Assembly (NCBI RefSeq): GCF_009834535.1
Contig: NC_045714.1
Location: 15,066,001-15,130,000 of the forward strand
Length of the DNA stretch: 64,000 bases
Direction: 5' to 3'
Source: Camelus ferus
Taxonomy: Eukaryota
A program made the position numbers and the translations under genes. This document shows positions 30,774 to 43,900 of the stretch, in pieces; position 1 is the stretch's first letter; every line of letters begins with the position of its first letter. A model generated the notes under the pieces. That model was not told where the DNA came from and ran no database searches. It worked only from the letters and a program-made list of their open reading frames with translations.

Positions 30774-31171
30774 ACGTGGAGACCCTCTGGGCGCAGCAGG
30801 GTCTGCAGAAGCTGCGGCTACCCCTGCCTTGGGCACAGCTTGGACACTTGTCTGTTGGCTAGGGGTGGGCCAGGCTTGACAGCACAAACCCCTTGGCCAA
30901 GAGCCCACCTGACAGGCCAGTCCAGTGTCTGTGGGGACCCCAGAGACGGCCCCAGGGTCTGGGCCCCGGGTGAGAAGCCTTGAAGCCACCTTGCTTTCTG
31001 GGGAGGGTCCTACTAGAAGGTGCTTCCTCAGAACCTCCCAGGCTGCCCTGCTGGCTTGTGGGTGGAGCCCCAGGAGCTTTGCTGCTGAGCTAAAGAGGAG
31101 GAAGGAGGGGAGCCCTGCCCCTCCTCTCTGGGGGACCTTCTAGGGACCTGCTGTTAGTCAGGGGCAGGGCT

Positions 31172-31177
31172 AATAAA
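31172..31177 (+). terminator. RTEL1 polyadenylation signal
   Basis: AATAAA about 400 nt after the long-isoform stop and upstream of the TNFRSF6B ATG. Confidence 0.7.
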
Positions 31178-31587
31178 GCTGCTGCCACTACTGGGATGGG
31201 GTCTGCGTGGCCTGGGCAGGGTGGTGGGTTTGAGGGTGCCGGGAAGGATGGGATGGATGTCTCGGCAGTCTCCCTTCCACCTGGTTTCAGCGGCAGGTGT
31301 CTCCAGGGACTTTGTCCCAGTTTGTCCTGTAGGAGGGGTGCTGCTCCCCCCTTCCACCCTCCCACTGCCAGGCCTGGGAAGGGGGCCATGAGCTGCCCAT
31401 GGTGCTTAGGGGCCCTCACGGGACCACCCTTCCCCTGGGCTCTGGGGAGGCGGGGGCCAGAAGTGGGTCAAAGCCTAGGCCCCTGGTCGCCGACGTCTCC
31501 CCCGGTGGGGAGGGGAGGGGCTCCCGCGGAGGCGCAGCCAGGCCGGCCCTTATATGACCTGGAGGCCCCCGTTGCTCCAGCGAGACC

Positions 31588-33035
31588 ATGAGGGCCCCTC
31601 CTTGGTCGCTGCCATCTCTGCCGCTGGCTCTCGCGGCCCACGGGGCGGCGGTGGACGCGTCCACCTACCCGTGGCGAGACGCGGAGGCGGGGGGGTGGCT
31701 GGTGTGCAGCCAGTGATCCCTGGGCACCTTCGAGCAGCGGCCTGGAGGCCGGGACAGCCCCACGACGTGCGGTACGTGCCCGCCCCGCCACTACACATAA
31801 TTTTGGAACTACGGGGAGCGCTGCCACTACTGCAACGTCATCTGCGCGGAGCGCAAGGAGGAGGCGCGGCCGTGCAGGGCCACCCATAACCGCGCCTGCC
31901 GCTGTCGCCCCAGCTTCTTCGCACACGGCGGCTTCTGCCTGGAGCACACACCCTGCCCGCCCGGCGCCGGCATGGCTGCCCCCAGTGGGTGCGGGTGCGG
32001 GGGGCCGCCGTGCCAAGACCTCAGCTGAGCGAGGACGATCCCCGGCTCTCCTGACCCCGTAATCTGTCCTCGTTCTCAAACACCCGCAGCCAGAGCACGC
32101 AGTGCCAGCCGTGTTCCTAGGCACCTTTTCAGCCAGTAGCTCGAGCTCGGAGCAGTGCCAGCTGCACAGCCCTGGGTCCGGCCTTCAACGTGCCGGACTC
32201 CCTTCCACGACACCCTGTGCACCAACTGCATGAGCTTCCCACTCGGCTCCAGCGAGCTGGGGGCACTGGGTGAGCCGGAATGGGGCGCGGAGCCCCAGCT
32301 GTCGGGTCCGAGGCCAGCCCTGGAGCGTGAGGCTTTGGCTGGCTCCCAGAAGTTGTGTGGGTTCGAAGGGCACCGGAGCCCCACAGAGCCAACTTTGGAG
32401 AGCTCGGGTGGTGGGGGTGGCCCAGGGAATGCACCACGCGGAGGGTTTTAGCGCTGGTGGGTGATGCCATTTCCCGCCAACGTCGGGAAACAGGCTCAGA
32501 GGGTTTAAAGGCCTCCCATGGGGTCAGGGTGGTGAAAGGGGACTGAGCCCCTTAGCGTCCCATCTCATCCCTGGAGTTGACCCACGAACCCCGCCCCCAA
32601 CCCGCCTCCCTGCTGCCGCAAGTCCCACAGCTGCGGTCGACCCGCCACCACAGCTCAAGCCTAGCCCACTTGTTAGCCCGCAGGGGTTCGTTCCTCCTTT
32701 GTTCTGTCCTCACCACCCCCTGCCCACAGAGCCTAGCGAGGACCTGACTGAGCCCCCACCTCGCCACACCCTCCTGCAGGGACCAGGGAGTGCGAGCGCG
32801 CCCTTGTCGACTTCGTGGCTTTCCAGGATCTCTCCGCCCAGAGGCTCCTGTGGCTGCAGCAGGCCCTGACCAGCCTAGGGGCATGGAGCCTGCCAACGCC
32901 GCTGCCGGCGGCAAGGGCGGGCCGCACGGCCCTGTGGCTGAGACTGGCGGCAGCTCACGGAGCTCCTGTGAGGCGCCGGACAGGCTGCCCGGGCTGGAGC
33001 GCAGCATCCACGGGCGCTTCCTCCAGGCGCCCTGA
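31588..33035 (+). pseudogene. TNFRSF6B: Decoy receptor 3 (TNF receptor superfamily 6B), unitary pseudogene
   Basis: Three exons (31588-31984, about 32080-32269, 32780-33035) with DcR3 motifs TYPWRDAE, DSPTTCG.CPPRHYT, FWNY.ERC.YCNV.C.ER, CRATHNRACRC, ECERA.VDFVAFQD and LPGLERSI..RFL. Lesions: TGA at 31714-16, TAA at 31798-800, exon 2 acceptor CAA instead of CAG (32077-79), and frameshifting deletions in exons 2 and 3. A TATA-like cttatat is at about 31549-55. Confidence 0.93.
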
Positions 33036-33133
33036 GCGCCCTCCCATCATTTATTCACTCCCGGCCTGAGCCCCCCGCGTGGGCGGCCCCCTAGCCGTAC
33101 CAAAGGAGGCTTCTGACCTGGTTCCTGGGTCAC

Positions 33134-33139
33134 TTTATT
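33134..33139 (-). terminator. ARFRP1 polyadenylation signal
   Basis: TTTATT on + (AATAAA on -). A second one is at 33050-33055. Confidence 0.65.
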
Positions 33140-34866
33140 TTTTATAAAGCGGATTTGTCAGTGTGGCGTCTGACCGGCCACAGTGGGCACACCTGGTGGG
33201 GAAAGACCTGGGCAGCCGACCTGAGTGTCCAGCACTCTCAGGCTGGCCCCACCCCCATCTGACAGACCTCAATGGACAGTGGGTGGTAGCTGTGGGGCGC
33301 GGTGGGGTCCGTGAGGCCCGCTCTGCAATCCCCCATTGCCTGCTCAGTAGGTAGAGCCTTATGGAGGGTGGGCGGCCAAGCCCAGGGGCTCTCACTGCAG
33401 AACAGATGGCAACCCAGGGCAGTGGGCACCAGCCAGCAGGCCCTGGGCACCAGGACTCCCACTCAACCTGACACTCCCGTGGACTCTGCCCATTTCAAAC
33501 AGCAGGGATTTCCTAGGAAGGGACAGCCAAGGCCTCCTGGGAGGCCTAGGGTGTCCCACTGGCTTTCTGGGAAATGAGGCTTTTCTCCTCTGGGGCAGGT
33601 TCAGAAAACGGCTTGACTCACCCACCCAGGGGGACTCTCAGCCTTACCCTTGTTCTGGGAGCCCTCCCTCCACCAGCCCTGGAGCCCCCTGCCTGACCCC
33701 CAAGGAAGGGCCCCAGTGAGAGGCAGGGTCACAGCCTTCCCATGAGTCATCCCACCTGCAGCAGGCCTCCACCCCTAGCCCTGACTCATCCCTTCCTCAG
33801 CAACTCCCACGCCCCACCAGGGAGAACAGTCTGGGGGGCCTGACCTTCAGACACAAAGCTGCCAGGTCTCCAGAGGAACAATGGATAGGAGCCATTCCAG
33901 CTGTCTATTTTGTCCATGGCTCGGCTCACTGGGTGTTGCCAGCCCCCATGGGGGCTGTGGGGAGGGTCCTCACCTGGGGGGCCCCTGCTCCTGGGCATAG
34001 GCCTGGAAAGGGATTTCTAGATGCCTTACACCAGACCCGAGGGGCACACCACCCCTCACCCCCAGCTAGGAATGCACCCGAGCTGGTGACCACAGTCATC
34101 CTAGACTGGTGGCAGGCTCAGAGGGGGCACCCACTCCCACCATGACCCCATAGCTTCCCCTCCTGGCTTGGGATCAGAACGAGGTGGCTGGGCCAGTGCA
34201 GGGGGCACACGGCCTCCCAGGCAGATCTCCCCTGCCCTGTCCTGAGGCTGCGTCACAACCCACAGCCCTACTGGCTTGCAGGGACTAGGGCCACGTCTCC
34301 CTCGAGGCCTCCAGCCCACCGCCAGGATCAGAGATGAAAGAGGCTGAAGACAGTCATGACCCCACCAGCTTCCTCCACAGGCACGATACCCAGAGCCGCC
34401 CTGCAAGCCACAGAGGACCCCACCACCCTGGAAAACCCTATTTCCAAGCAGGGTCCCCTAAGGCCCCACTGGGTGCCAGGCATGCTGGCCTGCTGGGGCA
34501 GCAGCTCCAAAAGGAGAGTTGGCCTGCCAAGGCCTTACCCCAGGGCCTGCAACCTGGGCCTTGGTTGGGGGGGGGGGGGTTGGTGGTGTCCAGGCCTGAT
34601 GTGGCCCTGGGCCCTGGGCCCCAGTAGGAGTCGGGTGAGGGTCCTGTGTGGCACTGGCCTGGCTTACTGCCCCGGCCCCCCTGGCAGAAGCCCTTGGATG
34701 CCTACACTTATCTGGACACAGAGAAAAGTTTGTCTTAGAGAAAAAACAAAGCAAATGAAAACCAAAGGGCACAGCAAACCCAGCCCCAGGATCAGCGGTG
34801 CAGAGCCAGCAGAACTCCTCTAGCACGCAGGGATGCACGGTGGGCACCAGGGGTCGCCGGCTGTCC

Positions 34867-39889: not shown

Positions 39890-40900
39890 CCGACACCAGG
39901 AGTGGGCGATCCGGCCCGCACCCGCCTCCCAGCTTCCCCCAGGTGGCCAGCGGGGCCGTCTAGAGCCCGGCTTGGCCCGCCGCCCCTCCGCCGCCGCCGC
40001 CGCCGCCGCCGCCGTAACTGCTCCCGGCGCCCGCGACCCCGCTCCCCGACCCGGGGCTGCGGCCGGGCTTCGCTCCGCTCGGGTCTCCCCGCGCGCCGCC
40101 GCCAGCAGGCGCCTTTCCGAGGCGGGGCGCGTGGGTGCGGGCGGCGGCGCTGAGGGACTGCGGACCGGCCGCCGGGCCCAGCCCAGCTCTGCCCGCCCGC
40201 TCCGGCCTACCTCGCCCGCCCGGCCGAGCCGCCGAGCCGCCGAGCCGCCGCGGGTCTAACTCGCCGACCCCACGCCGACCCCGCGCTGACCTCGCGCGCC
40301 GCCCGACGGGACGCGGGCCGGCCGCCCGGGAAGGGGCGGGGCCGTCCCGGCGGCCCCCGCGCCGGGCACTTCCGCCGGCGGCGGCGGCGCTCGGGCGGAA
40401 GTGCTTGTGGGCTGCGAGGGCGGAAGCGGGGCGCTGGGCCTCTGCGGCCGGTGACGCCGCCGGGCGGTGTGTGGCGGCGGCCGCGAGACCACGCGGAGGA
40501 GGACCCGGCCGGGGACGCGACGGGGCCCGGGTCCGAGGTGACCGGCGGAGCGGGGACGGGCGGCGCGGGTCGCGGAGGGTGGGCCGGGCCCGGGGCCCCG
40601 GGCCGAGACTCGGAGAATCCGGAGGAGCCTGACAGCAGCTCCCGGGACGCCCGAGAAGGGAGCCGCGGCCGTGGGGCAGTGGCCAGGGGCCGGCTCTGGC
40701 TCCTCCACTCGGAGCTGGAGACCCCTCCGGCCCAAACCGGGAGAGCGGGCCCTTCGCGGCTCCGCAGGCTGTCCGCCGAGGGCGGCAGTCGGCGCAGCGC
40801 TCGGTGCCGGCCTTGCGGGGTGGCCGGTCCTGAGCTCATCTGGCTTCTTTCCCCCGCAGCGCTGGTCCTCACCCAGGGACCCGCCCCTGCCCGCCGCGAG
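39890..40900. promoter_or_regulatory. ARFRP1/ZGPAT bidirectional CpG-island promoter with non-coding first exons
   Basis: Very dense CpG. ARFRP1 exon 1 donor GAG|GTAGGC (-, 40211/40210), ZGPAT candidate exon 1 donor GAG|GTGACC (40537/8), ZGPAT exon 2 acceptor 40859/60. Inverted ETS sites at 40367-74 and 40396-403. Confidence 0.9.
39988..40014. repeat. (CCG)9 trinucleotide repeat in ARFRP1 intron 1
   Basis: Nine perfect CCG units were counted directly. Confidence 0.95.
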
Positions 40901-40922
40901 AAAGCAGCCCCCTCCTTGCAGG

Positions 40923-43900
40923 ATGGACGAGGAGAGCCTGCAGACCGCCCTCCGCACCTACGACGCGCAGCTACAGCAGGTGGAGCTGGCCCTGGGCGCC
41001 GGCCTGGATCCCTCCGAGCTGGCGGACCTGCGCCAGCTGCAGGGGGACCTGAAGGAGCTGATCCAGCTCACCGAGGCCAGCCTGGTGTCTGTCAGGAAGA
41101 GCAAGCTGCTGGCCACACTGGATGGAGAGCGCCCAGCCCGGGAAGATGCTGATTGCTTGGCTTTCCAGAAGGCCGTTGCTGAGGGAGCCGAGGTGCCAGG
41201 AGCCCCTGGGGCAGAGCTGGAGACTGTTCCTAAGGCAGAGACAGGGCCTGGACCCACCGAGCCTGAGCAGGAGGAGGAAGAGGGGGAGGACGAGGAGGAC
41301 GGGGCAGAGCTGAGCGGGAGGAAGGTGAACGCCCCCTACTACAGTTCATGGGGCACCCTGGAGTATCACAACGCTATGATCGTGGGCACCGAAGAGGCAG
41401 ACGACGGCTCCCCTGGCGTCCGGGTGCTCTATCTCTACCCCACGCACAAGTCCCTGAAGCCCTGCCCCTTCTTCCTGGAGGGGAAGTGCCGCTTCAAGGA
41501 GAACTGCAGGTAAAGCCTGGGGTCCTGGGCCCCTGTGGGGGGTGGGGGGCTTACAGATGAGACCAGGGCACGGCTGGCCCTCTGTGCTGTGTGTCGTCCG
41601 TCTCTGCCCAGCAGGGTACTGACAAGAAGAGAGTTTTGGCGGCCAGGGGATTCCTACAGCAGTGTCCTTGTTGAGAGGTTTACTCGGATTTTCCCAGGTA
41701 GAGCACGTGTAGAAAGGCTTGCTGAAAAGAATGGACGCTACCCACCCTACCATCATCAGTTGCACTGTTCAGATTGAAGCAGCTACAACTTACTTTTATT
41801 ATAGAAACTTTGTTATAGAAATTGCTGAACAGACAGGACGTTACAGAGTTGCATGCTGACTTCCCACCATCCCATCCAGCTTCATTGTTTGTTAACAATT
41901 TGCAGGTCTTGTGTCATCTTCCTGCCCCTGGATGGTTTTAAAGCAAGTTTTAGAAATTACTGGGGTTTTCACCTATAAATACTTCAGGGTGCACAAGTAA
42001 TCTAACTGATCAAAAAAGTCATTGCCACACGTAGCAAATTTAACGATAACACCTTGTTCATATTCAGGTTTTCACAGTGGTTGTGATGATGTTTTCCTTG
42101 AGCACATAACTTTAATTTTGTTTCTTTTTACTTTATCTTTGCAAGGAATATCTATGAAGATTTGTAAAATTTTTCTTTTCTAGCCAGTAGTCCAGGGTAA
42201 CTGTTTTGAGTTCTTTGGTTGTCTTATTTTTTTGTTTTGTTTTGTTTTGTTTTTTGACAACCAGGAAGTTTGTCTTATTTCTTTATAGGTTCTTGCAGGG
42301 CCCAGAGTCTTACTTGGCGCATTTCTCCCTTTCTCCTTTTTTTGTAAGTTTTGAAGAAATGCAGCGCACCTGCAGAAAAGTCCGTAGTTCATAAGCCTGC
42401 TTGAGTTCCCACAGAGTGGATGTACCTGTGTCACCAGCAAACATCAAGGAACAGAGGCGTAGGCCCTTCCATCTTTTCTGCCACTGGTCCCTCTGGAGGG
42501 TCCCCCTGCGTCCCTGCACAGGGTCCCATATGAGGGTGAGCGCTGCCGTGTCCATGTGCTGCTTCCTCTGGGCAGGCGCTGTTCCGAGAGTTTCCTACAC
42601 ACTAACTCAGGTGAGCAGCAGCCCTGCCAGGCAGGTCCTGCAACCCTCGGTTGCCCAGGTCACAGGGTCAGCCAGGCTCTGCAGTGCTCCCAGCCACTAC
42701 GCTCAGGGGCTGCTTGCTCTGTCCACCTTAGGCTGGACCAGTGCCGCCTGCAGACCCCCACATCACCACACCCCAGTCTCATAACTGTTTTCTTCATTTG
42801 CTTTGGGTTTTTAGAAGTGAAGTAACACAGATAATGTTGAAGCACACTGTGACCCACCGCTGTCCCCTCCCCTGCCGGGAGGCTCGGCATCACAGCGTTG
42901 GTGCCTCTCTCTAGTGCACGTTAGCTCTGTGGGAACATGTGTGTCTGTAAATAGTACACGGTTGTGCTTCATTTTCTAAATAAACAGTATCACCCTAGGC
43001 TTCATTTTGCAACTTGCGTGTCTCACTAAGCGTGTTGGTGGGAGAAGGCCCCGCTGGTGTCTGTGGAACTGTTTATTGTAACTACTGTGTGATTTTCTCC
43101 ACGTGAGTACACCACGTTCTATTTATCCTGTCTCCTGACGTTGTCCAGTTTTTATTACAGACAATGTGCTATGAACACTGTACTACATGTCTTTTTTCAT
43201 ACGCAGTGGGGTGAGAGCTTCCCTGAGGTGTGAGGCGTGGAGGGCACGTGCCTCTCTGTTCCTGCCCGGCAGGCAGTTTCCAGGCCCTGGTCTTCGCCAG
43301 GACCACCCGCGCTCGCCTTCTGTGACTCACGGCTTCCTGCCCATTGAAAGCTGGGGAAGTGGTCTTGATTCAACTTGTATTTTGTCAGTCATTACTGAGA
43401 CTGGGAATTCTCTCATGCACTGGCTCTAACTTAATCTCCATGTATCAGTATCCATATAAAACAGATGTAAAACAGAGATGACCATCATCTTTCGCAGCTG
43501 TTAGGAGAATGGAATGCATTAACATGCATTAATTAAAAATTTTTGAACAGTACCTAATATGTAGTAAGGACACAGGAGACTTAAAATTTTTATCTTGTTG
43601 TTGTAAATTAAAATCACATGCAGGAAGTACAGGTGTATCATGGGAATCATTGTAACACCCTAGTACTCACCGCTCAGATCAGAACTACAAATTTGCCAGT
43701 TACCCCGGAAGTTCTCCCTGTGCCTCAGCCTACATGCAGCTTTCCCCTCCTCGTCTCCCTCCTCCAGAAACCACCACTGTCCGGACTTTTCTGATGGTCG
43801 CCTCCTTATGTTCTGTATGGTCTGTCACTGGGGCCACAGGCATGAGCGTTGTAGTCTAACTCGCTCACGTTCTAAGCCTGCTGTGCCTGCATCTGGCTGT

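What the first reader, a model, noticed from the sequence alone, without database searches (positions are those of the whole stretch)
31588..33035. TNFRSF6B (DcR3) is a unitary pseudogene: an apparent independent gene loss in this lineage
Seen: Cys->TGA (31714-16), Gln->TAA (31798-800), loss of a CRD cysteine (RPC->RPG, about 31744), exon 2 acceptor CAG->CAA (32077-79), about a 1-nt deletion giving TAG (32118-20), about an 11-nt deletion at 32161/2, about a 2-nt deletion near 32190, about a 2-nt deletion near 32947 and a larger deletion with TGA (32969-71) in exon 3. So many mixed lesions, with intact neighbouring genes, argue against sequencing error. Established: DcR3 is a soluble decoy for FasL, LIGHT and TL1A and is missing in mouse and rat. 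Inference: convergent loss in camelids with unbuffered FasL/TL1A signalling. The indel-free, CpG-rich exon 1 suggests a fairly recent loss. Indel sizes rely on the recalled human sequence.
Basis: partly seen in the sequence, partly recalled or inferred. Interest (0 to 1): 0.85.

Follow-up and report, generated by a model that had tools for sequence, protein, structure and literature searches.

The report
Camelid DcR3 (TNFRSF6B) is a pseudogene
The camel copy of the immune decoy-receptor gene DcR3 (TNFRSF6B) is a dead gene whose main defects are shared with alpaca, so the whole camel family lost it long ago, independently of mice and rats.

Summary
Window 31588-33035 (+) is the syntenic TNFRSF6B/DcR3 orthologue, lying between RTEL1 and ARFRP1, and it cannot encode DcR3. 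The window is 100% identical to Camelus ferus GCA_009834535.1.

I aligned it with intact warthog, orca, goat and donkey genes and with five other camelid assemblies: alpaca, two dromedary, one further Camelus and a second C. ferus.

- **Shared by alpaca and all camels (seven lesions):** TGA 31714-16, loss of the Cys codon at 31744-46, TAA 31798-800, intron-1 acceptor AG>AA at 32078-79, a 1-nt deletion near 32114, a 2-nt deletion at 32944/45 and a 42-nt deletion at 32976/77.
- **Camelus only:** TAG 32118-20 and a 2-nt deletion at 32200/01.

Crown-camelid dN/dS is 0.89 against 0.27 in intact lineages. Exons diverge as fast as introns.

So this is an old, family-wide loss that predates the camel/llama split, not a recent one. 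I found no paper reporting it. One automated 58-mammal screen that included alpaca and Bactrian camel lists TNFRSF6B loss only for muroid rodents. Consequences for FasL/LIGHT/TL1A signalling were not tested. Interest is moderate.

The parts
31550..31555 (+). TATA-like motif about 35 nt upstream of the ATG (TTATAT). It is conserved as CTTATAGG in intact orthologues and mutated to TTACAC in alpaca.
   Evidence: Alignment. A promoter role is inferred, not tested.
31588..31984 (+). Remnant of exon 1 (signal peptide, CRD1-CRD3). The only open frame from the ATG is 42 codons.
31714..31716 (+). Nonsense mutation TGC (Cys) > TGA. Shared by alpaca, dromedary, the third Camelus assembly and C. ferus.
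31744..31746 (+). Conserved CRD cysteine codon lost (GGA in camels, GAA in alpaca).
31798..31800 (+). Nonsense mutation CAG/CAA (Gln) > TAA. Shared by all camelids examined.
31984..31986 (+). Last base of exon 1 changed G>A (31984, Camelus only). The GT donor at 31985-86 is kept in camels. In alpaca the donor is CT.
32078..32079 (+). Intron-1 acceptor AG > AA. Shared by all camelids examined.
32080..32269 (+). Remnant of exon 2 (CRD3-CRD4).
32113..32120 (+). A 1-nt deletion inside a conserved Cys codon, shared by all camelids. In Camelus the shifted frame immediately reads TAG (32118-20).
32161..32162 (+). Junction of an 11-nt deletion lying between two CTGCAC repeats. Among six camelid assemblies it is present only here. 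Twelve runs of two organism labels hold all 5 sampled words around it, so it is probably a segregating allele.
32200..32201 (+). Junction of a 2-nt deletion. Camelus only, not in alpaca.
32780..33035 (+). Remnant of exon 3 (C-terminal, heparan-sulfate-binding part in human DcR3). The ancestral stop TGA at 33033-35 is kept.
32944..32945 (+). Junction of a 2-nt deletion. Shared by all camelids examined.
32967..32971 (+). Extra T at 32967, which puts TGA 32969-71 in the local ancestral frame. It is found only in this assembly. Whether it is a private variant or a consensus error is unresolved.
32976..32977 (+). Junction of a 42-nt deletion. Shared by all camelids examined.

Best explanation
Window 31588-33035 is the unitary pseudogene of TNFRSF6B (decoy receptor 3) in Camelus ferus. 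It sits at the ancestral position between RTEL1 and ARFRP1 and keeps the ancestral three-exon layout.

The gene was inactivated in the common ancestor of living camelids. By the time Old World camels and alpaca/llama split, it already carried:
- two nonsense codons;
- a lost CRD cysteine;
- a destroyed intron-1 acceptor;
- two frameshifting deletions;
- a 42-nt deletion.

Since then it has drifted neutrally and each lineage has added its own lesions:
- Camelus: a 2-nt deletion and TAG;
- alpaca: a lost donor and three more frameshifts;
- dromedary and the third Camelus assembly: further Cys>Tyr changes;
- an 11-nt deletion apparently still segregating in two-humped camels.

No DcR3 protein can be made. 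At most, a 42-residue peptide (signal peptide plus 17 residues) could be translated.

Inferred, not shown: camelids, like muroid rodents, lack the soluble decoy that in other mammals neutralises FasL, LIGHT and TL1A.
For: - **Identity:**
- **Synteny and exon structure:**
- **Species:** the window is 100.000% identical to GCA_009834535.1 over 21,078 bp. The nearest named protein cluster is camelid ZGPAT.
- **Lesions across six camelid assemblies and four intact outgroups:**
- **Read support:** at least 14 runs from three organism labels hold 0.90-0.93 of the 31-mers. The junction of the 11-nt deletion is held by 12 runs.
- **Relaxed selection (NG86 with least-squares branch lengths):** omega is 0.27 (0.20-0.36) on intact branches, 0.67 (0.37-1.49) on the camelid stem and 0.89 (0.47-1.70) in the camelid crown.
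- **Relaxed selection (GY codon model):** omega is 0.093 in intact species against 0.449 in the crown.
- **No constraint on exons:** alpaca-camel exon divergence is 7.4% against 6.1% in introns and flanks, with equal indel density.
- **No camelid DcR3 protein:** none appears among 78 DcR3 hits in 5.8 billion proteins. The best identity of any hit to the window is 75%.
Against: - I could not lay reads on the locus. Read support therefore rests on shared-word shares, not on per-base pile-ups.
- I could not scan the whole genome for a second copy.
- Public annotations of four camelid assemblies carry a 287-298-residue gene model on this locus. I could not see its name or sequence.
- The GY codon-model omega for the crown (0.45) is below 1.
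- RNA-seq assemblies hold most of the locus, so it may still be transcribed.
Confidence: 0.95

Rival explanations
1. The lesions are assembly or sequencing errors in a GC-rich region, and the real gene is intact.
For: Four indels are private to this assembly: +T at 32039, the 11-nt deletion, +G at 32538 and +T at 32967. Over 31965-33200 they are its only differences from a second C. ferus assembly. This pattern is typical of consensus errors. Other first-stage notes report frameshifts in RTEL1 on the same window.
Against: The two stop codons, the Cys loss, the acceptor mutation and the 1-nt, 2-nt and 42-nt deletions recur in six assemblies of four species built from different data. Runs hold 0.90-0.93 of the words. 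Even the 11-nt deletion is held by 12 runs.
Confidence: 0.01
2. The loss is recent and specific to Old World camels, or to this species, as the first reader inferred from the indel-free, CpG-rich exon 1.
For: Exon 1 has no indel in C. ferus or dromedary and keeps a CpG o/e of 0.85.
Against: Alpaca shares seven disabling lesions at identical positions. Stem omega is already 0.67. CpG count in exon 1 is down from 48-66 to 34-43.
Confidence: 0.02
3. The locus is kept for a non-coding or alternative-coding role. Candidates are an RTEL1 read-through transcript, a CpG-island regulatory element, or the 287-298-residue models in public annotation.
For: - RNA-seq assemblies of four runs hold 0.88 of the words of 31400-33200, introns included.
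- The TATA-like motif and the CpG-rich exon 1 persist in camels.
- Gene models are annotated on the locus.
Against: - Exons diverge at least as fast as introns and take indels at the same density.
- Crown omega is compatible with 1.
- The annotated models differ in length between species. The C. ferus model ends at a different stop (33069) from the others.
- In the window, no one- or two-intron model from the ATG gives an open frame of that length. Only models with three cryptic introns do.
- There is no Rfam match.
- The alpaca TATA motif is mutated.
- Unspliced coverage in RNA libraries can come from DNA carry-over or pre-mRNA.
Confidence: 0.04

Closest known systems
Functional TNFRSF6B / DcR3 of other mammals (human structures 3mhd and 3k51; warthog, orca, donkey and goat genes)
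   Same: - Same chromosomal neighbours (RTEL1 upstream, ARFRP1 downstream on the other strand).
- Same three-exon layout.
- The best sequence match is to DcR3.
- The remnant still scores as a TNFR cysteine-rich domain.
   Different: - No open reading frame.
- 3 of the 20 cysteine codons conserved in the four intact species are lost in this window.
- Splice acceptor destroyed.
- 14 codons of the C-terminal part deleted.
- Evolves neutrally.
Loss of TNFRSF6B in muroid rodents (mouse, rat, Chinese and golden hamster, prairie vole)
   Same: Lineage-wide loss of the same decoy receptor. The mouse genome has no DcR3 (PMC5477258). An automated screen lists erosion in five muroids (PMC7498332).
   Different: It is an independent event inside Cetartiodactyla, whose other branches keep the gene. 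In camelids a nearly full-length, alignable remnant survives, so the order of lesions can be read. The same screen included alpaca and Bactrian camel but did not list them for this gene.
Other camelid-wide unitary pseudogenes (for example CETP erosion in Bactrian camel and alpaca, PMC7498332)
   Same: Same kind of event: a single-copy gene disabled before the camel/llama split.
   Different: A different gene and pathway. I made no claim or test here about the phenotype.

Membership tests
TNFRSF6B / DcR3 orthologue | Best sequence match is to DcR3 rather than to OPG or other TNFR members | tested here: met
   human DcR3 at E 1.7e-29, OPG at 9.8e-12, DR6 at about 1e-6.
TNFRSF6B / DcR3 orthologue | Conserved position between RTEL1 and ARFRP1 | tested here: met
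   warthog, orca, donkey, goat; camelids. The window is identical to L009.
TNFRSF6B / DcR3 orthologue | Three coding exons with conserved boundaries | tested here: met
   The homologous boundaries are found. Both donors and the intron-2 acceptor are kept. The intron-1 acceptor is mutated.
TNFRSF6B / DcR3 orthologue | TNFR cysteine-rich domains | tested here: met
   piece 31801-31983 hits PF00020 at 38 bits (cut-off 29.4). Intact warthog gives 95 bits over 4 stretches.
Functional DcR3 gene | Uninterrupted reading frame of about 300 codons for a secreted protein with all CRD cysteines | tested here: not met
   two nonsense codons, frameshifts, and 3 of 20 conserved Cys codons lost.
Unitary pseudogene | Disabling lesions are real, that is, seen in independent data | tested here: met
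   Six assemblies of four species. Word shares of 0.90-0.93 in at least 14 runs. No per-base read pile-up was possible.
Unitary pseudogene | Orthologous to a working single-copy gene in relatives, and neither a retrocopy nor a duplicate | tested here: met
   Introns lie at the ancestral positions and the neighbours are syntenic.
Unitary pseudogene | No functional copy elsewhere in the genome | tested here: inconclusive
   No camelid DcR3-like protein appears among the hits, and no other note exists in this genome. No whole-genome scan was possible.
Unitary pseudogene | Neutral evolution after inactivation | tested here: met
   Crown omega is 0.89 (0.47-1.70) against 0.27 (0.20-0.36) in intact lineages. 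Exon divergence is at least as high as intron divergence. The GY model gives 0.45 against 0.09.

The most novel reading that the evidence does not exclude
The ancestral camelid loss of DcR3 was not merely tolerated. It either was adaptive or forced compensating changes in the FasL-Fas, LIGHT-HVEM/LTBR and TL1A-DR3 axes. That would make camelids a natural large-animal DcR3 knockout, with altered control of apoptosis and mucosal inflammation.
Probability: 0.12. Interest if true: 0.65.

Novelty: new member of a known kind. Interest (0 to 1): 0.45.

Why it matters
DcR3 is a soluble decoy that neutralises FasL, LIGHT and TL1A. Its physiology is hard to study because mice lack the gene (PMC5477258).

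A second, independent and ancient loss in a family of large domestic animals has three uses:
- It shows that the gene is dispensable outside rodents.
- It offers a natural comparison group (camelids against pigs and ruminants) for the FasL/LIGHT/TL1A axes.
- It warns that DcR3-based biomarkers or reagents cannot be carried over to camels, llamas and alpacas.

It also affects annotation. Gene models of 287-298 residues are placed on this dead locus in public camelid annotations.

Tried and rejected
There is therefore no per-base read or splice evidence.
- **Antisense ORF search.** I searched the protein collection with the long antisense ORF 31471-32124, hoping to pull camelid Logan contigs. 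The best hit was a goat contig.
- **Ancestral reconstruction.** I did not try it by other means. I used least-squares branch lengths on pairwise dN and dS instead.
- **Supplementary tables** of the 58-mammal screen are not held.
- **Literature searches** for TNFRSF6B or DcR3 together with camel, alpaca, pseudogene or gene loss found no report of a camelid loss.
- **Annotated 298-residue model.** Brute-force search of intron sets found 94 stop-free three-intron models and none with one or two introns. The annotated model could not be identified.
- **Rfam** gave no match.
- **Rejected readings:** assembly artefact for the core lesions, and recent species-specific loss.

Full report
**What is there**

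The ATG at 31588 opens a frame of only 42 codons, ending at TGA 31714-16. A second stop, TAA, follows at 31798-800. The stop-free piece 31801-31986 matches human decoy receptor 3 structures (3mhd, 3k51) at E 1.7e-29, far better than OPG at 9.8e-12. It also scores as a TNFR cysteine-rich domain (PF00020, 38 bits against a cut-off of 29.4). A search of 1.84 billion representatives and then of 5.8 billion proteins returned DcR3 of more than 60 mammals.

**Intact reference genes**

I fetched the genomic loci of warthog, orca, donkey and goat. In all of them the gene lies between RTEL1 and ARFRP1, with ARFRP1 on the opposite strand. Exact splice mapping gives three exons. The homologous exons in the window are 31588-31984, 32080-32269 and 32780-33035.

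**Checking the lesions**

- TGC>TGA at 31714-16.
- TGC>GGA at 31744-46.
- CAG/CAA>TAA at 31798-800.
- Intron-1 acceptor AG>AA at 32078-79.
- A 1-nt deletion inside a Cys codon near 32113/14, after which the shifted frame reads TAG at 32118-20.
- An 11-nt deletion at 32161/62.
- A 2-nt deletion at 32200/01.
- A 2-nt deletion at 32944/45.
- An extra T at 32967, which produces TGA at 32969-71.
- A 42-nt deletion at 32976/77.

In addition, the last base of exon 1 is G>A (31984). The ancestral stop codon (33033-35), both donors and the intron-2 acceptor are retained.

**Whose genome, and who shares the lesions**

The open frame containing ZGPAT exon 1 (40542-41510) finds a camelid ZGPAT cluster at 99% identity. 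The next best hits, in ruminants and hippo, are at 88-90%. The cluster members are named Camelus ferus, C. dromedarius and Vicugna pacos.

I used those proteins to fetch their genomic loci with 10-kb flanks. That gave the DcR3 region of six camelid assemblies:
- GCA_009834535.1 (C. ferus), which is 100.000% identical to the window over 21,078 bp, so it is the source of the window.
- GCA_000311805.2, a second C. ferus assembly, with N gaps in exon 1.
- GCA_048773025.1, a further Camelus assembly at 99.79% identity, species label not shown.
- Two dromedary assemblies, at about 99.0% and 98.7-99.1% identity.
- Alpaca, at 94.7-96% identity.

| Distribution | Lesions |
|---|---|
| Alpaca and all camels | TGA 31714-16; lost Cys codon 31744-46 (GGA in camels, GAA in alpaca); TAA 31798-800; acceptor AG>AA; 1-nt deletion in exon 2; 2-nt deletion at 32944/45; 42-nt deletion |
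| Camelus only | G>A at 31984; TAG at 32118-20; 2-nt deletion at 32200/01 |
| Alpaca only | 1-nt deletion just before the TAA; intron-1 donor GT>CT; 1-nt deletion in exon 2; 2-nt deletion in exon 3 |
| Single assemblies | Extra Cys>Tyr change in dromedary; another Cys>Tyr change in the third Camelus assembly |

The gene was therefore already dead in the last common ancestor of Old World and New World camelids. [quoted passage not shown] Commonly cited dates, from my own knowledge, are about 16-25 million years.

**Features private to this assembly**

Over 31965-33200 the window differs from the other C. ferus assembly only by four indels:
- +T at 32039;
- the 11-nt deletion;
- +G at 32538;
- +T at 32967.

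All four are absent from every other camelid assembly.

For the 11-nt deletion, which lies between two CTGCAC repeats, I searched a 90-nt stretch centred on the junction. Twelve runs of two organism labels hold 5 of 5 sampled words, and one run of the same study holds 1 of 5. So the deletion very probably exists in animals and is polymorphic. This rests on five sampled words only.

The three single-base insertions remain unverified. They may be private variants or consensus errors.

**Read support in general**

At least 14 runs, mostly marked as probable DNA, from three organism labels hold 0.90-0.93 of the 190 sampled 31-mers of 31400-33200. The ten fixed lesion sites overlap about 17% of all words. 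A share of 0.93 therefore leaves room for only a few missing sites. It roughly matches the about 7% of words that overlap the four private indels; this is an inference.

**Selection**

I built a codon alignment in the ancestral frame, with stops and gapped codons masked.

| Branch set | omega, NG86 with least-squares branch lengths (bootstrap 95%), | omega, GY codon model, |
|---|---|---|
| Intact lineages | 0.27 (0.20-0.36) | 0.093 |
| Camelid stem | 0.67 (0.37-1.49) | not fitted |
| Camelid crown | 0.89 (0.47-1.70) | 0.449 |

Alpaca-camel divergence is 7.4% in exons against 6.1% in introns and flanks. There are 7 indel events in exons and 6 in non-coding sequence, over similar lengths. This is neutral decay.

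The indel tally points the same way: three frameshifting or large deletions on the stem, against three in alpaca and one or two in Camelus.

Exon 1 is still CpG-rich (43 CpGs, o/e 0.85) but depleted against intact species (48-66 CpGs, o/e 0.93-1.06). Persistence of a germline-unmethylated CpG island is the likely reason; this is an inference.

**Other copies and annotation**

No camelid DcR3-like protein is among the 78 hits. The best identity of any returned protein to the window is 75%. I could not scan whole genomes.

The annotations attached to four camelid assemblies carry a gene model of 287-298 residues on this locus, with no Pfam hit on record. In three assemblies the model runs from the ATG to the ancestral stop. 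In C. ferus it ends at a different stop (33069). In the window, no model with one or two introns gives such an open frame. Only sets of three cryptic introns do. I could not see the models' names, so I cannot say whether databases flag the locus as low-quality or as a pseudogene.

**Transcription**

Four (meta)transcriptomic runs hold 0.88 of the words of 31400-33200, including introns and flanks, and two more hold 0.36-0.49. This fits unspliced RNA, read-through from RTEL1, or DNA carry-over. I could not tell them apart. There is no Rfam family in 30900-34500.

**Known or new**

DcR3 neutralises FasL, LIGHT and TL1A and is absent from the mouse genome (PMC5477258; PMC11762692). An automated screen of 58 mammals that included alpaca and Bactrian camel lists TNFRSF6B erosion only for mouse, rat, two hamsters and prairie vole (PMC7498332). 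Full-text searches found no paper reporting a camelid loss.

I file it as a new member of a known kind: a lineage-wide unitary pseudogene of a gene already known to be dispensable in rodents.

The functional consequence, unbuffered FasL/LIGHT/TL1A signalling, is an inference from the human literature and was not tested here.

Noticed in passing
window 32039, 32538, 32967: Three single-base insertions, all absent from five other camelid assemblies including a second C. ferus. Together with the 11-nt deletion they are the window's only differences from that assembly over 31965-33200. If they are consensus errors, frameshift findings elsewhere on this window, such as the RTEL1 notes, need read-level checks.
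   Followed up: partly
L009 666-2147, L010 660-2116, L008 662-2115, L006 779-2250: Public annotations of four camelid assemblies place a 287-298-residue gene model, with no Pfam hit on record, on the dead DcR3 locus. The C. ferus model ends at a different stop from the others.
   Followed up: partly
L007 1-1973 (C. ferus GCA_000311805.2): In the older C. ferus annotation, the RTEL1 gene model (1258 residues) runs on into the DcR3 remnant, as a read-through fusion model would.
   Followed up: no
It may be another decaying copy, although Rhynchocyon petersi has a normal one (P0132).
   Followed up: no
L004 4001-5398 and L005 (goat): The goat protein P0168 ('hypothetical protein, partial', 265 aa, 62% identical to the pangolin query P0002) appears to be a mis-modelled annotation. 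In the ancestral frame the goat gene reads intact, with no stops or frameshifts.
   Followed up: partly
window 31550-31555 and L006: A TATA-like motif about 35 nt upstream of the ATG is conserved in intact species (CTTATAGG). It is slightly changed in camels (CTTATATG) and destroyed in alpaca (CTTACACG).
   Followed up: no
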